Assembly (NCBI RefSeq): GCF_006345805.1
Contig: NC_043016.1
Coordinates: 558,001 to 622,000 of the forward strand
Direction: 5' to 3'
Length of the DNA stretch: 64,000 nucleotides
Origin: Octopus sinensis
Lineage: Eukaryota
Positions 930 to 64,000 of the stretch are shown here, piece by piece (within the stretch, counting starts at the first letter, position 1; every line of letters starts with the position of its first letter). The notes below the pieces were generated by a model. It did not search any database. It was not told the DNA's origin and worked only from the letters and a program-made list of their open reading frames with translations. The position numbers were made by a program, and so were the translations under genes.

Positions 930-1156
930 ACTCTTTACTCTTTACTCTTTTACTTGTTTCAGTCATGTGACTGTAGCCATGCTGAAGCACCGCCTTTAGT
1001 CGAGCAAATCGACCGCAGGACTTATTCTTCGTAAGCCTAGTACTTATTCTATCGGTCTCCTTTGCTGAACCGCTAAGTTTTGGGGACGTAAACACACCAG
1101 CATCGGTTGACAAGCGATATTGGAGGGACAAACACAGACACACAAACACACACACA

Positions 1157-1193
<37 letters not shown>

Positions 1194-1397
1194 ACACACA
1201 TATATATATATATACATACACATACATATATACGACGGGCAACTTTCAGTTTCTTCCTACCAAATCCACTCACAAGGTTTTGGTCGGTCCGAGGCTATAG
1301 TAGAAGACATTTGTCCAAGGTGCCACGCAATAGGACTCGAACCCAGAACCCTGCGGTTCGTATGCAAGCTATTTACCACACAGCCACTCCTACGCCT
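930..1397 (-). mobile_element. tRNA-derived CORE-like SINE (family B), full length
   Basis: Head aggcgtaggagtggctgtgtggtaa with B-box-like gggttcgagtcc; CORE-like gtggcaccttggacaaatg; internal (TA)n(TG)n; 3' ggcggtgcttcagcatggc...ctgaaacaag and (AAAGAGT)n tail. Five further copies in the window. Confidence 0.9.
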
Positions 1398-15047: not shown

Positions 15048-15358
15048 TGTTGTGTTTGTTCCTTCTCGAGCCATGCGTCGGCCATAAGGACCGGTTTCCC
15101 GGTTTCTTGGCGTATAGGTTCCCCACCTGGACGGGACGCCGGTCCATCGCAGGTGAGCTGCAAGATACAAGAAGAAAGAGTGAGAGAAAGTTGTGGCAAA
15201 AGAGTCAGCAGAAGTTCACCATTACCTTCTGCCAGAGCCGCGTGGAGCTTAGAAGTTTCACTCATAAACACACACATCGTCCGGTCTGAGATTCGAACCC
15301 GCGATCCCTCGACCGCAAGTTCGCTGCTCCAACCACTAGGCCATGTGCCTCCACACTT
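15048..15358 (-). mobile_element. tRNA-derived SINE family D (V-domain-like), 10-bp TSD
   Basis: A-box tggcctagtgg, B-box ggttcgaatct; cctgcgatggaccggcgtcccgtccagg resembles the V-SINE domain; TSD ttaacggagt at 15038-15047 and 15359-15368. Confidence 0.9.
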
Positions 15359-16571: not shown

Positions 16572-16975
16572 GCAGGCACAGTTGTAAGGTAAGAAGATTG
16601 CTTCCCATGGATCCGGTTTCAGTCTCACTGCGTAGCGCCTTGGACAAGTGTTTTATACTATAGCCTCGGGCCGACCAAAGCCGCGTAAGTGGACTTGGTA
16701 CACAGAAACTGAAAGGAGCCCGGCGTATACACATATATATCTATGTGTGTGTCTTTACGTCTGCATTTGTCCCCCACCACCACTTGACAACCGGTTTTGA
16801 TATGTTTAGCCCCCTCCCATACGTTAGCGGTTCAGCAAAAGAAACTGATATTTTAAGTACCAGGTTTAAAAAAAAACAAATTAATCATGGGGTCGATTCG
16901 TTCGACAAAACTCTTCAGGCTGGTTCCTCAGCATGGCTGCTGTCAAATGACTGAAATAAGTAAAGAGAAGAAGAA
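16572..16975 (+). mobile_element. Family B CORE-like SINE, diverged
   Basis: gcgccttggacaagtg, ccgaccaaagcc, tail gactgaaataagtaaagag. Confidence 0.85.
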
Positions 16976-19769: not shown

Positions 19770-20440
19770 TATGTATGTATGTAAGTATGTAAGTATGTAT
19801 GTATGCATGTATGTATGCATGTATGTATGTATGTGTGTATGTATGTATGTACGTATGAATGTATGTATGTATGTGTGTATGTATATATGTATGTATGTAT
19901 GTATGTGTGTATGTATGTATGTGTGTATGTATGTATGTGTGTGTATGTATGTATGTATGTATGTATGTGTGTATGTATGTATTATGTATGTATGTTTGTA
20001 TGTATGTATGTGTGTATGTATGTATTATATATGTATGTATTATGTATGTATGTATGTACGTATGTATATATATGTATTATGTATGTATGTAATATGTTTG
20101 TATGTATTATGTATGTATGTATGTATTTATATGTGTATGTATTTATGTGTGTATGTATGTACGTATATGTGTATATATATAGTGTATATATACACCCCCC
20201 CACACACAAACACACACACATATATATGTACATATATGTATGTACGTGTATATACATATCTATAGTGTATATATCCACACATATATACGCATGTATATAT
20301 ATGTATATACATAATATATAAAATATATATATATATATTTACATATATACATATATATTTATTATATATATATATATATATATAATATATAAGCACACAT
20401 ATATAAATATACATATGTATGTATATTTGTTGTATCATCT
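19770..20440. repeat. (ATGT)n / TA compound microsatellite
   Basis: Directly visible. Confidence 0.95.
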
Positions 20441-20706
20441 TATCACAGAGAAATTTAATTATTCTACTTCATTGAACCAATTGTTAAAATCTTTCACGAA
20501 GAAATATCGTTATATCTACAAAATACTTAAACCTAGCACTTGTATTACTCCGAATAACAACCTATCTGTTCACATGGGTGTATGCTAAACACAGCGACAA
20601 ATATAAGTAAATGTCACTCATATTTCTGAACATACACACACAGATACACATACACACATACACAACACATACAAACGGGCACACACATATGTAGATGTAT
20701 ATATAA

Positions 20707-20745
<39 letters not shown>

Positions 20746-20929
20746 TATATATACAGACACACGCATGCATATATCTATATATACATACAGATTTAACACC
20801 CACACACATCACCACATATTGTTTGTTTTATCACATAGTTTATCTTAAATTCCCTCTCCAATCTCCCCATCAAATTTTCCATTAGAAATTTACTGATCAG
20901 AATGATAAAAACAATTAATAAATAGGAAC

Positions 20930-22460
<1,531 letters not shown>

Positions 22461-22645
22461 GCATTATGTTCGCATTATTAATACATTCAGCGAACATTCT
22501 GATTAGTGGTTTTTAAAATTAGTTGTCTTTTTCTTTTCTTCTTTAGGAATATTAATGCATTTTAAAACAACAATAAATATAATAATAAAAGCTACAGCAA
22601 TAAAAAAAAGAAAACAATGAAAGTATAACAACAGTAATACTGCAT

Positions 22646-22698
<53 letters not shown>

Positions 22699-22781
22699 GT
22701 CACAAAACTGAAATTTATGATAATATAGTTTTGTCCTTATACATGATTTTGCTCTTATCATTATTATTATTATTATTATTA

Positions 22782-22818
<37 letters not shown>

Positions 22819-23914
22819 GTTATTATTATTATTATTGTTGTTGTTTTTGTTGTTGTCATTGTTGTTGTTGTTATTATTATTATTATTATTATATTTATTG
22901 TTGTTATTGTTGTTATTATTATAACATTAATAATAAATACATTTAAAGCAGTTCATGTAAAACAACCGAAAATTAGCCCTGTCTTTGTATTTGTGATTTT
23001 AAATATAACGGAGACAATCTATTAACCGTTCTCTCAAGAGGTGTGATTTACCACACATGAAAGGAACCGATAATTGTTCTAGCAATTTCATTGTTTTCTA
23101 ATCAGAAAAATATTTGAAATTACTGTTAATAATTTGCAATCACTTTTTAACAAAAACGTTCCTTGATTAAATACAGATTCTGCTCATCTACCAATGTGTC
23201 ATGATATAGATGCTCCAGTATTGCTGTGTATCGTTATAAATGTGAATAAGAAAAAAAAATATTATGTAGGAATATGTGAATGTGCATAAAGCACTCTTTC
23301 TCGCTTTCTCATACACATTTACACACAGACGCAGACACACAGGCACACACACATACGCACATGTATACACACACATCCACGGAAATGTATTATCTGGAAT
23401 TGTTGATTTGTTTGTGGGAAACAACTAATCATTCATTCACTGGAAGTGATGCTCTCAGCATGTTGTAGAGCAAGCTTTATTGATAAATATATATGTGTGT
23501 GTGTGTGTGTGTTTAATAATAGGAGGGATGTGAACATCCAGGCAGATAACAGTTTTCACAATGTAAATGTCAAGGCCAGTTTCTTCAAATGGTTGACTTA
23601 AAGGTATATTCTTAAAAACTACCATCCGATGTCACGGTTTATTTCCTGGCTATACTAGTTATAAGGAAAACGACGAATCTGAACATCCAGATTTTCCGTT
23701 TTGTTTATTCATAGTAATTGTCCAACACGTGTTTCGATCATATCAATTGCAAATTGCTGCATATTTCTATGCATGGATTTATGAATAATCTGTACGATCT
23801 CTTCGGGGTGAAAATATGTCATTGTACAAGGGGTAATTCTCACCGTTATTAGTTTAAATCAGACTTGGTAGTAGTAATAGTAAACCATGTTGTTCAATGA
23901 TGTTCAACTCAACG

Positions 23915-23946
<32 letters not shown>

Positions 23947-23964
23947 ATATATATATTATATACA

Positions 23965-26900
23965 TGATTAATTGATTGATTGATTGATTCTAGTTTCAGC
24001 TTATGAGCTGTGGCCATGCTGGGGCACCGCCATTTGTGTTGCTACTTGGTTCACTTCATGGAGGCTTTCTAGCAACTGCTATTTGGTGCATGAGAGAGTT
24101 CGATGCAGCTGCCCTCATCTGCCCCTCCTGCCGTGAAGTTGGTTCATCTGGGACACCTGACAGGAAGAGATCCAGCTTCATTTTAAAGACATCTGTATCC
24201 ACCCCATGCAGGTCTCTCAGGTTCTTCGGGAGGATATTGAAGAGCTGTGGGCCTCGGAAGCCCAGGCTATCACAGAATCTTGTCCTACATCTTGATGGCA
24301 GGTTTGGAGTCCTAGGCACCACGCAGTGGCGCCCAGTTCTGGCATTTGCGTAACTCTCGATGCCAAAGTTCAGGACACTTCCCTCCAGGATCTTCCAGAT
24401 GTATATTATGGCATATCTTTCCCGCCTACGCTCCAGGGAATATAATTTTAATCTCTTGAGTCTTTCCCAGTAGCTTACATTCTGCATAGAGGCTATCTTC
24501 TTCGTGTAGCTTCGTTGGATCGCCTCAAGTTCTGTGATCAACTTGACACTGGATGGTGACCATAGCTGAGAGCAAATAGTCAAAGTGGCTTAGGACAAGT
24601 GTCTTCCAGAGGACCATCATGGTATCTTGTTCTCTTGTTCTAAAGGTTCTAAGAATCCATCCAGCCAGCCGTCTACATTTCATTGTCAGTTTAGCAACAT
24701 GTACATGAAAGGTCGCGTCATCACTCATGTGAATACCCAGGTCACGCACTGATTGTGCCTCTGGGATTGCAATCTCTCCGGGTCCAGTGTATTCATTGGG
24801 TATTGCATTCAGTTTTGCATGCTGATAGTATAAAGCTTGAAACTTTCCAGCATTGAACTGCATGCTATTCTTTTCAGCCCACTTGTATATTTCGTCCAGC
24901 TCACATTGCAGGTGTTTAGTGTCCTCGGGGTTCTGTATTGCCTGTGAAACTTTTGTATCATCTGCATAACTTGTGATCGTGGCTCTCTGCGTGGCTGAGG
25001 GCATGTCTGAGAGGGCCATTATGAACAGTAGTGGTCCCAGAACAGTGCCCTGCGGAACACCGCTCACTATTTGTGTGTTAATGGAGGTGGCCCCATTGGC
25101 TACTACCACCTGACTTCTATCCTTCAGAAAGTCATGAAGCCATTCTCCCAGTTTTCCAACTATGTTGAGATCACGCAGTTTGTGACATATCATTCCATGA
25201 TCGACTTTATCAAAGGCCTTTGCAAAGTCGAGATATATCACTTTCACATTTGAGTGGTGAGCAGCCGTTTCAGCACCCAGTCATAGTGTTGTAGGAGCTG
25301 AGTTAAACAGCTTCTCCCTGGTCGGAAACCATGTTGGGTGTCGAGCAGCAAGTCATTCTCTTCAAGGAAGGTGATCAGCTTCCTTCTGACTATTCGTTCC
25401 ATGACCTTGCTGATGTTGAGGTCAGAGAGATAGGTCTATAGTTCTTGGCTCCGCTCTGCTACCTCCTTTATGAATGGGGCATATTTTACCTTCCTTCAGT
25501 TTTCCTGGAAGTTTGCCAGCTGCAAGGAAGCTCTGAAAGAGGAACTGCAGTGGTCTTGCTAGGACTCTCTTACATGCTTTTAGGAGGATTGCCGGGAATC
25601 CATCGGGGCCGTAGCTGAGTCTGTTTTCATTTCATCTATAGCCTTGGTTACATCGTCTTCCTTATATCGATGTAATCTATCGTCGCCGCCTCTGATTTTA
25701 TATCTGCAGTGGTAAAAAAGTCAGTTGGATTGGTGATTTGGAGATGCCCAAGGGGTGGAGTGAAAACACTCTTGAATTGCTCATTCAGTATTTCACTTAC
25801 CCTCATTGGTTTTCTGTAAGTGTGCCATCCTTTTCGAGGAGTGGCCCTATTCTACAGTGCACTGTAGCTGTTTCTTTGGCATACCTGTAGAAAGCTCTGG
25901 GGTTAGATTTTATGTTTTCTATAGCCCAGGCTTCTTTGTCTGCTCTTTCTTTTTCATGGGAGAGTTGCAGACATTTTTCGATTCCAACAGTTTTATTTTT
26001 AGGCGGGACTTTTCACTGCTTTCAATCTGTGTTTAGGCGATTTGAAAATTTCGTACGCCGTCTCATTAAAATTTTCCTCTCTCTGGGGATTTTGTCTTGT
26101 GTACAGTGGCCTTTCTCTCTGGGACACATTTGTAGCATATGGCTTGCATTACAGACATGAATTGTTGAAGTTTCACGTCGATGTCTGGCGAGGAGAGACA
26201 TTTAGGCCAGTTTTTTGAGGATCTCTTTCTCAATTTGTTTCCAGTTTGCCTTATGGTAGTTCAAGCTGGAAAGATTTTGAGGGTTTCTTGTAGGCTGCAT
26301 GTCCGTGCTCTCTTTTGGCCGTACATGGTCAGCTCTATCATGTTGTGATCCGAGAGTAGTGTCGGTGTCACTTTCACATTATGGATGAGATCCATGTCAT
26401 TTGTGAAGCAGAGATCCAGTGTGTTACCTGCCCTGGTTGGTTGGAGTATTACCTGCTCCATGTACAGGGTGTTGATGAGGTCAGGAGGGACCTCGCCTGT
26501 CCTCGTTCACATCTTGTCATTCCTGGGAGAGAAAGGCCCTCGGGCCATCTGACATTGGGCAGATTGAAGTCTCCCATAAGAAGCACACCTATGTGCTGTT
26601 CTAAGTGGTAGAATTTCTTCTATTTTTATAAGGCAGTCTTCAAACTTGCCACATGGCTTGGGGCATCTGGAGGGCGATATGTAGCACACACAACTACATC
26701 AAGTTGCCTAATATGTACAATTAGTGTGTCACACACCGAGTTTGAGTATGACAAGAGGACCTGGGTGTGAGGTCCTCACGGATGTACATAGCAACACCTC
26801 CATGACTCCTTTCTTTCCTGTCGGTCCGTAGTACAGCATAATGTGGTATGTGTAACTCCGCATCTGCTATGTCCGGTTTCAGGTGCGTTTCCGTAAGTGC

Positions 26901-27065
26901 TATGCATAAGGCTTGATTGCATGCAACAAAGTCTCTCAGGAACGGGATTTTTGTCCTGTTACTGAGTGTTTGCAGTCCTCTGATGTTCAGTAGGAGCATC
27001 GAGGTGAGGTGTACGTTGTTGCCGGCGGTGTCCATCCTGTGTCTGTTTGCTGTGGTGGTCTGGTA
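23965..27065 (-). mobile_element. CR1-group LINE: near-complete APE-RT ORF2 (frameshifted), 3' UTR and (ATCA)n tail
   Basis: APE LLLNIRGLQ...LTETHL...GGVAMYI, TRAGNTLDL, SDHNMI; RT IYLDFAKAFDKVDH, GVPQGTVLGPLLF, YADD; C-terminal LKLYSLERRRERY; both ends flanked by (TA)n. Confidence 0.92.
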
Positions 27066-27139: not shown

Positions 27140-27168
27140 TGTGGTGTGTTGTGTGTGTGTGTGTGTGT

Positions 27169-27471
27169 GGAGGCGCAAAGGCCCAGTGGTTAGGGCAGCA
27201 GACTCGCGGTTGTAGGATCGCGGTTTCGATTCCCAGACCTGGCGTTGTGAGTGTTTATTGAACGAAAAACACCTAAAGCTCCACGAGGCTCCGGCAGGGG
27301 CTTGTGCCGATCCCTGCTGTACTCTTTCGTCACAACTTTCCCTCACTCTTTCTTCTGTTTGCCTGCTCGCTTAGCCACCGGGGTAGCGTCATTTGAAGGC
27401 TAAAACAATGCGAAGTACATTGTGACCAGCGATGTGCAGCAACATTTGATAACCTGGTCGGTCACGGTGAT
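27169..27471 (+). mobile_element. tRNA-derived SINE family C (tail type i)
   Basis: Head ggaggcgcaaaggcccagtggttagggc...ggtttcgattccc; tail cctggtcggtcacggtga(ta)n; second copy at 49301-49590. Confidence 0.9.
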
Positions 27472-28064: not shown

Positions 28065-29480
<1,416 letters not shown>

Positions 29481-34324: not shown

Positions 34325-36415
34325 TTATTTGTCACAAGGGTGAAGGATGAGGGGGACAATACAGAAACAGACATAAAGTGTTGGGGGTAAACATATAATG
34401 AAATGAGAAAAAAAGGATAGAAAGAAAGAAATTATGTTTACGCGGTATAAACTGAAAAAGCATACAAGGGTTACGAAAATGTAGTGGCGGGGAGGATGAT
34501 AGCGATGAGGCTCTTCTAATAGAGGAAGGCCTCCAGAGATAGTCCGAGACTGCCTTGAAACCCCAAGAGGAAGTGCTCTCTCCAATTCCTTCCCTCCGAC
34601 TCACAGGTACCATCTACTCTTGCCATTTTCGATGCTCTCGGTGTCGGGGGTTGACCTGCTTTCTCTTCTGTGGGTCTTACGAATAGTAATGGGTCACGTT
34701 TCGGACTTATCCCATCTTGCGAGCTCCGGGACGAAGACCGCTTCGCTCAACAGCAACAGCAACAGCCCCAACAGTCATAAGGAAACCATAATATTAACAG
34801 CCATTTTCGCAACTTTCACCTTCCAATAAAACTCACTCGAGGACAACACTTCCCTCTCCACTTTCAATTTTCTTTTCAAGTAAAACTTGAAGAAGACAAT
34901 GAGAGCTCTACCAAAGAGGAATGTAATTGTCCTCATGCCTTTCAGCCTTGTCCACCAAACAGTCTCTTTCACTATAGCAACCAGGCAAAGGAAAACTGTC
35001 TTGCCTTCCCGATTGAAGGGCGGCGGTGCTATCATCACTACAGACTCGGCCGACAGCCAGATTCGTCCCACATGTGACAACGGTTGTTCGACATAACTTC
35101 ACAAGTCAGCAATGTCTGTCCACTGAACGAAGGCATGCAGAATGGTTTCGCCACTTTGCGCACAACTCGGACCAGCCCATCTGACAGCACATTCATACCT
35201 ATAGAGTACCCCCCGCTAGCACTGCCAGGCCAAGGACATCTGGAAAGTATGCATGATAATTCCCGACCTGAAAATCCCCCGGAACAGACTAGCCTGTTCG
35301 TTCTTGTCGGCGCCCAGAGTCTCTACGAGAAAGACGTCGCACTTCCTCGCCACTAATGCTCTATAAATTTCTAAAGTGGAGCATCCACCGATCTCATTGT
35401 CCGACTAGTAGAGAGCTGTGAGCGCCTGATAATATTCTGGGTGCTCCGTCAAGGAAACGAGTTGCAGAAAGACGAGCCTCATAAACGGAGCCCAGACGCT
35501 CACCGTCCAGGCATCATTGCAGGTGACGTAATCTAAGAGCGTGTATGCGCATTAGGAGCCACGGCATACCTAATTTGCCACTCAGAGTATACTGGCAACA
35601 GACTGACCGCCTGACCATTCGAACGCGCCCTTCCGCAAGAATTTAAATAAGAGACGCTCCAATCTCGTCAAGCAGTAACTGGGACAAGGCACGACAGTCG
35701 ACCGATAAATGATAACAGAGTCCTTTCAGGGACAAATTCCTCTCAGTTCATTTCTGGGTAAGACTTGCTAGCCACCCTATTCTCCACCTTGTCTCAGTTC
35801 TTGTCAACCTGGAGGTCGGGACCAGCGTCCGACGATGCCGTCCGATCGCATTGTCCTGTCTCTCCAGGAGCCCAACCGCAAATCCACCGTTTTGTCGGAG
35901 TTGATGTTATCTTCTGCAATCGACTCATATTCTTTTAGGATGGTGCCGACTGTCTCCACTTCAGAGGCATCCGACACTATGACGGTGACGTCGTCTGCGT
36001 ATGCCGACACTACTCTTCCTTGTCCCAGTTCGAAAGAGATACCCCTTAGCTGTTCCAACTTCCGCAGCAGTGGCTCGAGTGCCAATACGTATAGAAGAGG
36101 CCACAGCGGGCAGCCTTGACGGAGTGAGCGTGTGATGCCAAACGGCTCCGATAGTGGCCATTTACTTTGACCACTGAACAGATGCCACTATGCGTTGCAG
36201 CCTCCAGCCTCTGAAAACGTGTCCGAAACCGCCTGCTTTCAGGACGGTTTCCAAGTAGCAATGGTCGACCCTATCCAATGTTTTCGATTGACCCAAATTG
36301 ATCAGAGCACCCTCGAGCCAGCTTTGGTCCCAGCATTCTCTATGATGTATCGCATTAGGTGGAAGTTGTCGTGGATAGATCTGCTCGGGATTGTGCATGT
36401 TTGCTTGACCGTAAC
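34325..36415 (-). mobile_element. Tx1 (L1-clade) LINE fragment A: RT C-terminal half, C-terminal domain, 3' UTR
   Basis: QTCTIPSRSIHDNFHLMRYII; ALEPLLRKL...AYADD; AIVKETVWWTR; 3' UTR ends aataaatgaaa. Confidence 0.88.
34632..34799 (+). mobile_element. 5'-truncated SINE tail (type iv) plus a 38-bp extension, inserted into Tx1-A with a 10-bp TSD
   Basis: Matches the reverse complement of about 47770-47915; TSD gccattttcg at 34622-34631 and 34800-34809. Confidence 0.85.
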
Positions 36416-57490: not shown

Positions 57491-57837
57491 ACTCTTTACT
57501 CTTTTACTTATTTCAGTCATTTGACTGTGGCACAGCCTTTAGTCGAGCAAATCGACCCCAGGACTTATTCTTTGCAAGCCTACTACTTATTCTATCGGTC
57601 TCTTTTGCCTATCCGCTACGTTTCGGGGACGTAAACACACCAGCATCGGTTGTCAAGCGTTGTTGGGGGGGGGGACAAATGCAGACACACACATACATAT
57701 ATACGACGGGCTTCTTTTAGTTTCCATCTACCAAATCCACTCACAAGGCTTTGGTCGGCTCGAAGCTATAGAAGGACTGGACCCGGAACCATGTAGTTCA
57801 TAAGCAAGCTACTTACCACACAGCCACTCCTACACCT
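57491..57837 (-). mobile_element. Family B SINE with an internal deletion in the CORE region
   Basis: Head and tail present; segment between gctatagaag and ggactggacccgg missing relative to other copies. Confidence 0.88.
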
Positions 57838-63282: not shown

Positions 63283-63487
63283 TCACAGATTTGCTTGTCA
63301 GTTGTTTGACCTTAACCAGTTGAGCATTTCCCTTGGTGACTGACGATATGTGCTTGCGAACCATATGGTTCCGGGTTCAGTCCCACAGTGTGGCAGCTTG
63401 GGCAAGTGTCTTATACAATAGCCTCGGACCGACCAAAGCCTCGTGAGTGGATTTGGAAGGCGGAAACTGAAAGAAGCCCATCGTATG

Positions 63488-63554
<67 letters not shown>

Positions 63555-63752
63555 TCTGTGTTTGTTCCACTGCCGCGCTTGTGATAACCGATGCTGGGTG
63601 TTTTACGTTCCCATAACTTAGCAGTTCGGCACAGGATACCGATAGAATAAGTACTAGTCTCACAAAGAATAAGTCCCGGGGTCGATTTGCCCGACTAAAG
63701 GCGGTACACCTGCATGGCCGCAGTGAAATGTCCGAAACAAATAAAAGAATAA
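63283..63752 (+). mobile_element. Repeat E fragment fused to a family B SINE
   Basis: E sequence ...gacgatatgtgc joins the B head at ttgcgaaccatatggttcc. Confidence 0.85.
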
Positions 63753-63769
63753 ACGAATATTGACAATGA

Positions 63770-64000
63770 ATGGAGTGCCTGACCAGTGAAACGCGCCTTC
63801 TAGATAAAGGGAAAGAGTAGGCGCTCCTGTTTGGCCACATGTGGACTGAGACAAGGTACGACAATCAGGCGGTATAATATAACGGAGGTGATGCATGCAT
63901 TCGCCACCTTTGCTCAGACTTTCAAGGATCGTTCTCTTTCGGCCCATTTCTGGGTGATATCGGCCATTCAGTTTGTCACCCTTCCCAGCTCTTCTCCGTT
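63770..64000 (-). mobile_element. Tx1 LINE fragment C (runs off the window end)
   Basis: ITQKWAERERSLKV*AKVANACITSVILYRLIVVPC, homologous to Tx1-B LTQNWSGRALSLLGKAEVV...TYRLTVVPC. Confidence 0.75.

What the first reader, a model, noticed from the sequence alone, without database searches (positions are those of the whole stretch)
23990..24034. One CR1-LINE 3' end shared by two unrelated SINE families, with a covarying stem-loop
The CR1-group element ends (RNA sense) ggcggtgccccagcatggcca-CAGCT-cata-AGCTG-aaactag. The chimeric SINE at 52933-53162 ends with the same 45 nt (40/45) and reads CAGCT-cggg-AGCTG. Family B CORE-like SINEs (e.g. 43905-43945) read ggcggtgctccagcatggc..-CAGTC-aaat-GACTG-aaacaag. 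The 5-bp stem is kept through two compensatory pair changes while the 4-nt loop varies. It is established (eel UnaL2/UnaSINE) that stringent LINE RTs recognise a 3' stem-loop. The inference is that this CR1 family mobilises both SINE families through this hairpin.
Basis: partly seen in the sequence, partly recalled or inferred. Interest (0 to 1): 0.72.

Follow-up and report, generated by a model that had tools for sequence, protein, structure and literature searches.

The report
Octopus LINE tail borrowed by SINEs
A 43-base, two-hairpin 3' end of an octopus CR1-type LINE retrotransposon is also carried by an abundant SINE family and by one tail-swapped SINE copy, which is a real but ordinary example of SINEs borrowing a LINE's recognition tail.

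Summary
The LINE on the minus strand (about 27035 to 23990) ends in a 45-nt tail that matches 40/45 in the tRNA-headed SINE copy at 52933-53159. Five family B SINE copies carry a diverged version of it. The 5-bp stem is kept through two compensated pair changes.

The tools added three points:
- The shared module is two adjacent hairpins, not one. HP1 is an interrupted 8-bp stem with a conserved G-G mismatch and an NCCA loop. AAAC and a short tandem repeat follow.
- LINE relatives from other octopods (Argonauta hians, an Octopus vulgaris chromosome, two unnamed assemblies) keep HP1 almost unchanged: 22/22 against about 75% identity in the ORF. HP2's stem covaries and its loop is free.
- Only 1 of 5 aligned copies of the tRNA-headed SINE carries this tail, and the other four have other tails. 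I could not show that the tail-swapped form is a family.

Family B's stem variant occurs in none of the five LINE tails sampled. Its RTAAAAGA end repeat matches the sister LINE lineages, not the window LINE.

The kind is already published: bivalve CR1-14_CGi with two SINEs, passerine TguSINE1/PittSINE, and eel UnaL2. This is a new member of a known kind, of modest interest.

The parts
24033..27035 (-). Body of a degraded LINE copy. It has one long reading frame for an endonuclease and a reverse transcriptase, broken by frameshifts and stops. A 23-nt spacer follows the stop codon at 24056-24058.
   Evidence: Three-frame translation. Pfam RVT_1 at 87 bits and two Exo_endo_phos_2 fragments. 4257 homologues at E<=1e-20, the closest at 75% and 63% identity, the latter from Argonauta hians.
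24011..24032 (-). HP1 of the LINE tail: UGGC-G-GUGC cccA GCAU-G-GCCA. It is an 8-bp stem with a G-G mismatch and a 4-nt loop.
   Evidence: Predicted in the minimum-energy fold, z = -3.07. Identical 22/22 in L002 and L031, while the last 300 nt of the ORF are about 75% identical. The C-G pair becomes U-A in Argonauta.
23997..24010 (-). HP2 of the LINE tail: CAGCU caua AGCUG.
23966..23996 (-). AAACUAG linker followed by the terminal (AATC)n tandem repeat. There is no poly(A).
   Evidence: Sequence.
52994..53159 (-). tRNA-like head and body of SINE family A in the tail-swapped copy, followed by the linker AAAAAAAGAA. Box A reads TGGCCCAGTGG and box B reads GGTTTCGATTCC.
   Evidence: BLAST to four other A copies at 81-85% identity. 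The alignment shows the copy departs from the family right after CTGTTGTAC.
52934..52993 (-). CR1-type tail on the SINE A copy: HP1 52972-52993, HP2 52958-52971 (CAGCU cggg AGCUG), AAACUGG 52951-52957, and (ATGAA)3 52934-52950.
   Evidence: Covariance-model hit at 57.3 bits. 40/45 to the LINE (sequence). It shares the derived U-A fifth pair found only in the window LINE.
43895..44260 (-). SINE family B copy. The tail module is at 43902-43944 (HP2 CAGUC aaau GACUG), followed by (GTAAAAGA)n.
946..1362 (-). SINE family B copy. The tail module is at 953-995 (HP2 CAGUC acau GACUG).
63351..63748 (+). SINE family B copy. The tail module at 63699-63741 is decayed (CAGUG aaau GUCCG).
16606..16964 (+). 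SINE family B copy of a sub-type with an extra TTCTTCA before the tail. The tail module is at 16922-16960.
57500..57807 (-). SINE family B copy with an internal deletion in HP1. The tail module is at 57507-57538 and HP2 is intact.

Best explanation
The shared sequence is the 3'-terminal recognition and priming module of an octopod CR1-type LINE lineage. It is 43 nt long: hairpin HP1 (sequence-conserved, with a G-G mismatch and an NCCA loop), directly followed by hairpin HP2 (only the pairing is conserved), then AAAC, then a short tandem repeat instead of poly(A).

Inferred mechanism, by analogy with eel UnaL2, zebrafish ZfL2 and amniote CR1. The LINE's ORF2 protein binds this structure on its own RNA. 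The terminal repeats position the RNA on the nicked target for target-primed reverse transcription. RNA polymerase III transcripts that end in the same module are copied in trans.

The abundant tRNA-derived SINE family B carries the module with its own compensated stem variant and the RTAAAAGA repeat of the sister LINE lineages. Its likely partner is therefore a close relative of the window LINE rather than that LINE itself.

The SINE copy at 52933-53159 is a family A head and body whose normal tail was replaced, at the RNA level, by the module of the window LINE's own sub-lineage.

Shown: homology, module boundaries, folding, covariation, and conservation above that of the coding sequence. 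Inferred: protein binding and trans-mobilisation.
For: - Homology is far above chance.
- In the LINE, the family A copy and family B, similarity starts within 1-2 nt of the base of HP1 and runs to the repeat. In the LINE relatives the spacer between stop codon and module varies from 0 to 26 nt and is not conserved.
- Every tail folds on its own into the same two hairpins, with z from -2.3 to -4.3. The mutated family A copy is the exception at z = -0.5.
- HP1 is 22/22 identical in three LINE lineages whose ORF ends are about 75% identical.
- HP2 stems are CAGCU/AGCUG (window), CAGCC/GGCUG (L002), CAGCCC/GGGCUG (L031), CAGCCG/CGGCUG (Argonauta) and CAGUC/GACUG (family B). Loops are CAUA, CGGG, UGCG, GUAAACUA, ACU and AAAU.
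- Pair counts: 90.6% of cells paired against 21-38% for slid controls, 6 pairs changed on both sides, and 0/500 shuffles reach the observed value.
- All elements end in short tandem repeats.
- The same plan is published for other CR1/L2 LINE-SINE pairs (PMC4824008, PMC5729268, PMC1636434, PMC4176376).
Against: - There is no functional test.
- All copies in the window are old. The LINE is frameshifted and family B copies are about 75-78% identical to each other.
- Only about 13 tails could be collected. The alignment used for the larger pair count was fitted to the model, which leans towards the structure.
- Several both-side changes in HP1 come from single decayed copies.
- No LINE with family B's stem was found.
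- The window LINE's end repeat (AATC)n differs from the family A copy's (ATGAA)n.
- Only one SINE A copy with this tail is known.
Confidence: 0.75

Rival explanations
1. The copy at 52933-53159 is a one-off chimeric retrocopy, not a member of a SINE family. The reverse transcriptase started on a LINE RNA tail and jumped to a truncated SINE A transcript. On this reading only one SINE family (B) uses the tail.
For: Only 1 of 5 aligned family A copies in the window has this tail, and the others have three other tails. An A-rich linker sits at the junction. No second copy was found in the O. vulgaris or Argonauta loci or in a six-frame protein search.
Against: A randomly sampled copy is more likely to belong to a multi-copy subfamily than to be unique. 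Family A swaps tails repeatedly, with at least four tail types in 64 kb. The searches that found nothing had very little octopus DNA to look at.
Confidence: 0.35
2. The SINE A copy and the LINE tail are two separate insertions. A LINE copy truncated at the 5' end to about 55 nt landed inside or next to a SINE A copy.
For: CR1-type LINEs are often heavily truncated at the 5' end (established knowledge).
Against: No remnant of any normal SINE A tail lies downstream of the repeat at 52500-52933. The LINE-derived part starts exactly at the module boundary.
Confidence: 0.07
3. The hairpins are passengers. The tail is kept only as sequence inherited from a common ancestor, and pairing is incidental.
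For: The number of independent compensatory events is small: two in HP2, one clear one in HP1 in a LINE lineage, and the differing sixth pair in L001 and L031.
Against: HP1 is more conserved than the ORF. HP2 keeps its pairing while its loop changes in both sequence and length. Slid-partner controls fall to 21-38% pairing. z-scores run from -2.3 to -4.3.
Confidence: 0.05

Closest known systems
Bivalve CR1-14_CGi with BivaV-SINE2 and BivaCORE-SINE1 (Nishihara et al. 2016, PMC4824008)
   Same: One mollusc CR1 LINE tail is shared by two SINE families with different bodies. Conserved stem-loops and compensatory mutations are used to argue for recognition by the CR1 reverse transcriptase.
   Different: The host class differs (Bivalvia against Octopoda) and the tail sequence is unrelated. 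Here the module is two adjacent hairpins, with HP1 conserved in sequence. The second SINE is represented here by a single copy.
Passerine TguSINE1 and PittSINE with the CR1-X tail (Suh et al. 2017, PMC5729268)
   Same: Two SINEs with different tRNA heads carry the same CR1-derived tail. The tail consists of a hairpin taken to be the reverse transcriptase binding site, followed by an 8-bp microsatellite.
   Different: Here the 8-mer is RTAAAAGA in Octopus-type lineages and ATTAAAAC in Argonauta, not AUUCURUG. There are two hairpins instead of one.
Eel UnaL2 / UnaSINE1 (Nomura et al. 2006, PMC1636434) and zebrafish ZfL2-1/-2 (Hayashi et al. 2014, PMC4176376)
   Same: These are stringent-type LINEs in which the 3' stem-loop and the terminal repeats are needed for retrotransposition. 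UnaL2's stem has a required internal mismatch, which parallels the invariant G-G mismatch in HP1. In ZfL2, ORF2 recognises the stem generally and the loop specifically.
   Different: Those are L2-clade vertebrate elements with experimental proof. Nothing has been tested for the octopus module, and its sequence is unrelated to theirs.

Membership tests
LINE-SINE pair with a shared 3' tail (stringent type) | The autonomous partner encodes an endonuclease and a reverse transcriptase. | tested here: met
   RVT_1 at 87 bits and two Exo_endo_phos_2 fragments below the cut-off because the frame is broken. Thousands of LINE-like homologues.
LINE-SINE pair with a shared 3' tail (stringent type) | The SINE 3' end is homologous to the LINE 3' end, while the bodies are unrelated. 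| tested here: met
   BLAST finds only the 46-nt tail shared between the LINE, family A and family B. The covariance model finds 7 tails.
LINE-SINE pair with a shared 3' tail (stringent type) | The tail forms a conserved stem-loop supported by compensatory changes. | tested here: met
   LINE relatives.
LINE-SINE pair with a shared 3' tail (stringent type) | The elements end in short tandem repeats rather than poly(A). | tested here: met
   (AATC)n, (ATGAA)n, (RTAAAAGA)n and (ATTAAAAC)n.
LINE-SINE pair with a shared 3' tail (stringent type) | The SINE has an RNA polymerase III promoter head derived from a tRNA. | tested here: inconclusive
   Box A and box B motifs are visible by eye in family A and family B. 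ARAGORN and Rfam call no tRNA.
LINE-SINE pair with a shared 3' tail (stringent type) | The SINE with this tail is multi-copy. | tested here: inconclusive
   Met for family B, with 5 copies in the window and 3 in a 20-kb O. vulgaris locus. Not shown for the family A/CR1 chimera, with 1 copy and no other found.
LINE-SINE pair with a shared 3' tail (stringent type) | Mobilisation in trans depends on the tail. | not testable with these tools
   This needs a retrotransposition assay.
CR1 clade of LINEs in the strict sense | The reverse transcriptase falls inside the CR1 clade in a phylogeny with reference LINEs. | not tested
   No reference LINE library was available. The 3' plan of hairpin plus 8-mer repeat fits CR1 as described in PMC5729268, but L2 and Rex1 relatives look similar. 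Octopus genomes are reported to hold active CR1 elements (PMC13282606).
CORE-SINE superfamily (for family B) | Presence of the roughly 60-bp CORE domain. | not tested
   No CORE consensus was available. Published annotations call the main octopus SINEs tRNA-Core and tRNA-Deu (PMC8967140).

The most novel reading that the evidence does not exclude
This 43-nt double hairpin is the portable retrotransposition signal behind the octopus-specific SINE expansion, in which SINEs make up about 11% of the O. vulgaris genome. HP1, with its invariant G-G mismatch and NCCA loop, would be the sequence-specific determinant, conserved since Argonauta and Octopus split. HP2 would be a purely structural element. 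Several CR1 sub-lineages could then cross-mobilise any RNA that acquires the module.
Probability: 0.4. Interest if true: 0.45.

Novelty: new member of a known kind. Interest (0 to 1): 0.3.

Why it matters
SINEs are among the largest repeat classes in octopus genomes, and their expansion is specific to the lineage. The octopus repeat papers I could search list tRNA-Core and tRNA-Deu SINEs and CR1 LINEs, but give no partner or tail analysis. Naming the LINE lineage and the exact RNA module that SINE family B depends on would:
- let SINE and LINE activity be dated together;
- give a compact, testable recognition element made of two hairpins with different kinds of constraint;
- provide a simple covariance model for annotating these elements.

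The principle itself is textbook, so the gain is local rather than conceptual.

Tried and rejected
- A scan of JGI metagenome contigs for GGTGCNCCAGCATGRCYRCAG gave 25 hits. All are chance matches, almost all on GC-rich contigs (one has 41% GC), and none has the hairpin or AAAC.
- Scans of prokaryote genomes and viral contigs for the tail pattern gave 4 chance hits and 0 hits.
- A protein search with all six frames of the tail-swapped SINE, meant to find other copies through spurious ORFs, gave nothing at E<=0.001.
- A protein search with the LINE C-terminus gave only 6 hits. Two of them were useful: L030 and L031.
- Rfam matched neither the tails nor the SINE heads. Its other hits in the window are nearly all microsatellite artefacts.
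- ARAGORN found no tRNA.
- More distant LINE relatives (L003, L004, L032, L033; about 40-50% protein identity) do not share the tail sequence. They share only the plan of a hairpin followed by a 10-mer tandem repeat. The module therefore seems confined to octopods.
- A Pfam scan of a relative's upstream ORF failed because of stop codons.
- Nested insertion as the origin of the tail-swapped copy was rejected.
- I could not obtain more DNA from the window's own species. Copy numbers, subfamily consensus sequences and age profiles were therefore out of reach.

Full report
**What is in the sequence**

The window looks like octopod DNA. It is AT-rich, full of microsatellites and dense in SINEs. The closest relatives of its LINE come from Argonauta hians and Octopus vulgaris.

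A degraded LINE copy lies on the minus strand from about 27035 to 23990. It has one long frame, broken by frameshifts. That frame gives a reverse transcriptase match (RVT_1, 87 bits) and two fragments of the endonuclease domain. Its stop codon is at 24056-24058.

After a 23-nt spacer the element ends, in RNA sense, with UGGCGGUGCCCCAGCAUGGCCA CAGCU CAUA AGCUG AAACUAG and then (AATC)n.

**Check of the observation**

The SINE copy at 52933-53159 ends with the same 45 nt. BLAST gives 89% over 46 nt with E 7e-12.

Family B SINEs carry a more diverged version: 33/45 by direct count at 43902-43946, and 80% over 46 nt by BLAST.

The core 19-mer, with up to three mismatches, occurs five times against 0.01 expected. 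A covariance model built from the tails finds exactly seven in the window. They are the LINE, the one SINE A copy, and five family B copies at 953-995, 16922-16960, 43902-43944, 57507-57538 and 63699-63741.

Folding each tail on its own gives the same two adjacent hairpins every time.

- HP1 is UGGC-G-GUGC, a four-base loop, then GCAU-G-GCCA. That makes eight pairs around a G-G mismatch.

z-scores against shuffles run from -2.3 to -4.3. The exception is the SINE A copy at -0.5, which carries a C-to-G change in the top pair of HP1.

In the LINE, the SINE A copy and family B, similarity begins within one or two bases of the foot of HP1. The shared unit is therefore exactly HP1 + HP2 + AAAC + repeat, about 43 nt before the repeat.

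**Relatives from elsewhere**

A protein search with the reverse transcriptase and C-terminus found two close relatives. A second search with the C-terminus alone found two more. Their contigs carry the same module.

| Source | Protein identity | HP2 stem and loop | End repeat |
|---|---|---|---|
| L002 (unnamed ENA metagenome contig) | 75% | CAGCC ugcg GGCUG | GUAAAAGA |
| L031 (NCBI assembly GCA_024449705.1) | 73% | CAGCCC guaaacua GGGCUG | RTAAAAGA |
| L001 (Argonauta hians) | 63% | CAGCCG acu CGGCUG | AUUAAAAC |
| L030 (O. vulgaris chromosome OX597824) | 59% | decayed LINE tail | ATAAAAGA |

In L031 the module starts immediately after the stop codon. L030 also carries three family B tails, with CAGUC ugau/uaau GACUG.

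HP1 is identical, 22/22, in the window LINE, L002 and L031. The last 300 nt of their reading frames are only about 75% identical. Argonauta differs at three HP1 positions. Two of them are the two sides of one pair (C-G to U-A).

The spacer between stop codon and module varies from 0 to 26 nt and is not conserved.

More distant LINE relatives (L003, L004, L032, L033) have unrelated tail sequences. They share only the plan of a hairpin followed by a tandem 10-mer.

**Covariation**

On a MAFFT alignment of ten tails, 87% of cells pair against 24-39% when partners are slid. Three pairs change on both sides, and RNAalifold predicts HP2 on its own.

On thirteen tails aligned to the model, 90.6% of cells pair against 21-38% for slid controls. 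Six pairs change on both sides, and no shuffle out of 500 reaches the observed values. That alignment was fitted to the structure, and several HP1 changes come from single decayed SINE copies. The count of independent events is therefore small.

The clear events are these:
- Pair 5 of HP2 changed from C-G to U-A on the branch to the window LINE.
- Pair 4 changed from C-G to U-A on the branch to family B.
- One HP1 pair changed in Argonauta.
- A sixth HP2 pair was gained as G-C in Argonauta and as C-G in L031.

Both are transition pairs that can pass through a G-U intermediate.

**How it most likely works**

The pattern is one hairpin conserved in sequence, with an invariant mismatch and an NCCA loop. 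The second hairpin is conserved only in pairing, and a short tandem repeat follows. This fits the published model for stringent-type LINEs.

- In eel UnaL2 the tail hairpin and its internal mismatch are needed for retrotransposition (PMC1636434).
- In zebrafish ZfL2 the ORF2 protein binds the stem generally and the loop specifically (PMC4176376).
- In amniote CR1 elements a hairpin and an 8-bp microsatellite are taken to be the reverse transcriptase binding and priming sites (PMC5729268).

I infer that the octopod LINE's protein binds this module on its own RNA. SINE transcripts that end in the module would then be copied in trans. HP1 is the better candidate for the specific contact, because HP2's loop is free to change. 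None of this is tested here.

**Who mobilises what**

The SINE A copy shares the derived U-A fifth pair and the AAACURG linker with the window LINE only. Its tail therefore came from that sub-lineage.

Family B's stem is found in none of the five LINE tails sampled. Its RTAAAAGA repeat is that of the L002, L031 and O. vulgaris lineages, not the window LINE's (AATC)n. Its partner is more likely a sister lineage. Alternatively, family B's tail has drifted on its own while keeping the fold.

**Is the second SINE a family?**

Five copies of the tRNA-headed SINE A were aligned in the window, and a further fragment lies at 54242-54402. Only the copy at 52933 has the CR1-type tail. It departs from the others right after CTGTTGTAC, with an A-rich linker.

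The others carry at least three other tails. This SINE therefore swaps tails readily.

No remnant of a normal tail lies downstream of the chimeric copy, so a nested insertion is unlikely. I found no second chimeric copy, but I had almost no further octopus DNA to search. A multi-copy subfamily is somewhat more likely than a one-off chimera, but this is open.

**Comparison with what is known**

The phenomenon is well described.
- Bivalves: CR1-14_CGi shares its tail with BivaV-SINE2 and BivaCORE-SINE1, with stem-loops and compensatory mutations (PMC4824008).
- Oyster: Vhc_1 SINEs share tails with CR1-1_CGi and CR1-14_CGi (PMC4758252).
- Passerines: TguSINE1 and PittSINE, with different tRNA heads, share one CR1 tail (PMC5729268).
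- A review lists many CR1-SINE pairs (PMC3747384).

The octopus repeat papers I could search list tRNA-Core and tRNA-Deu SINEs and active CR1 elements, but give no partner or tail analysis (PMC13282606, PMC8967140).

The finding is a new member of a known kind. Assignment to the CR1 clade in the strict sense, and the 'CORE-like' label for family B, were not tested because no reference library was available.

**Verdict**

Novelty is low and interest is modest (0.3).

Noticed in passing
window 53748-53838 (+): A U6 snRNA-like match at 43.3 bits, just under Rfam's gathering score of 44. It may be a U6 gene, a pseudogene or a U6-derived retrocopy. It lies about 600 bp from the tail-swapped SINE.
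   Followed up: no
window 27167-27322 (+), 49438-49592 (-), 47999-48148 (-), 15256-15354 (-), 54242-54402 (-), 34629-34692 (+): The tRNA-headed SINE A has a common head and body of about 160 nt joined to at least four different tails within 64 kb. One of those tails also occurs alone at 34629-34692. This indicates modular tail swapping.
   Followed up: partly
window 44496-46490 (-) and 28903-29178 (+): A second, unrelated LINE with reverse transcriptase ORFs of 344 and 284 aa. Elsewhere there is an ORF resembling the start of a LINE endonuclease domain, judged by eye and not scanned.
   Followed up: no
window 20000-24000: A block of very low GC content (0.16-0.24) made of low-complexity and microsatellite sequence, directly downstream of the LINE's 3' end.
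   Followed up: no
L003 4920-4990; L004 4280-4340; L032 about 440-510; L033 about 440-507: LINE relatives at about 40-50% protein identity, from other marine assemblies, end in unrelated hairpins followed by 10-mer tandem repeats (ACTTCAAGTA, GATTCAGTAA, ATCCACAAGT). This points to a common 3' plan for this LINE group.
   Followed up: partly
window 63819-63855 (+): A weak tail-like covariance-model hit (13 bits, E 0.03) about 70 bp downstream of a family B copy. It may be a very decayed tail.
   Followed up: partly
window 16922-16964 and L030 2958-3000, 15643-15685, 15994-16034: Some family B copies have extra bases (TTCTTCA or similar) just before the tail and a variant 5' arm in HP1 (GCTGGTG or GCAGTG). 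In one O. vulgaris copy, two HP1 pairs are changed on both sides. These may mark a separate B subfamily.
   Followed up: partly
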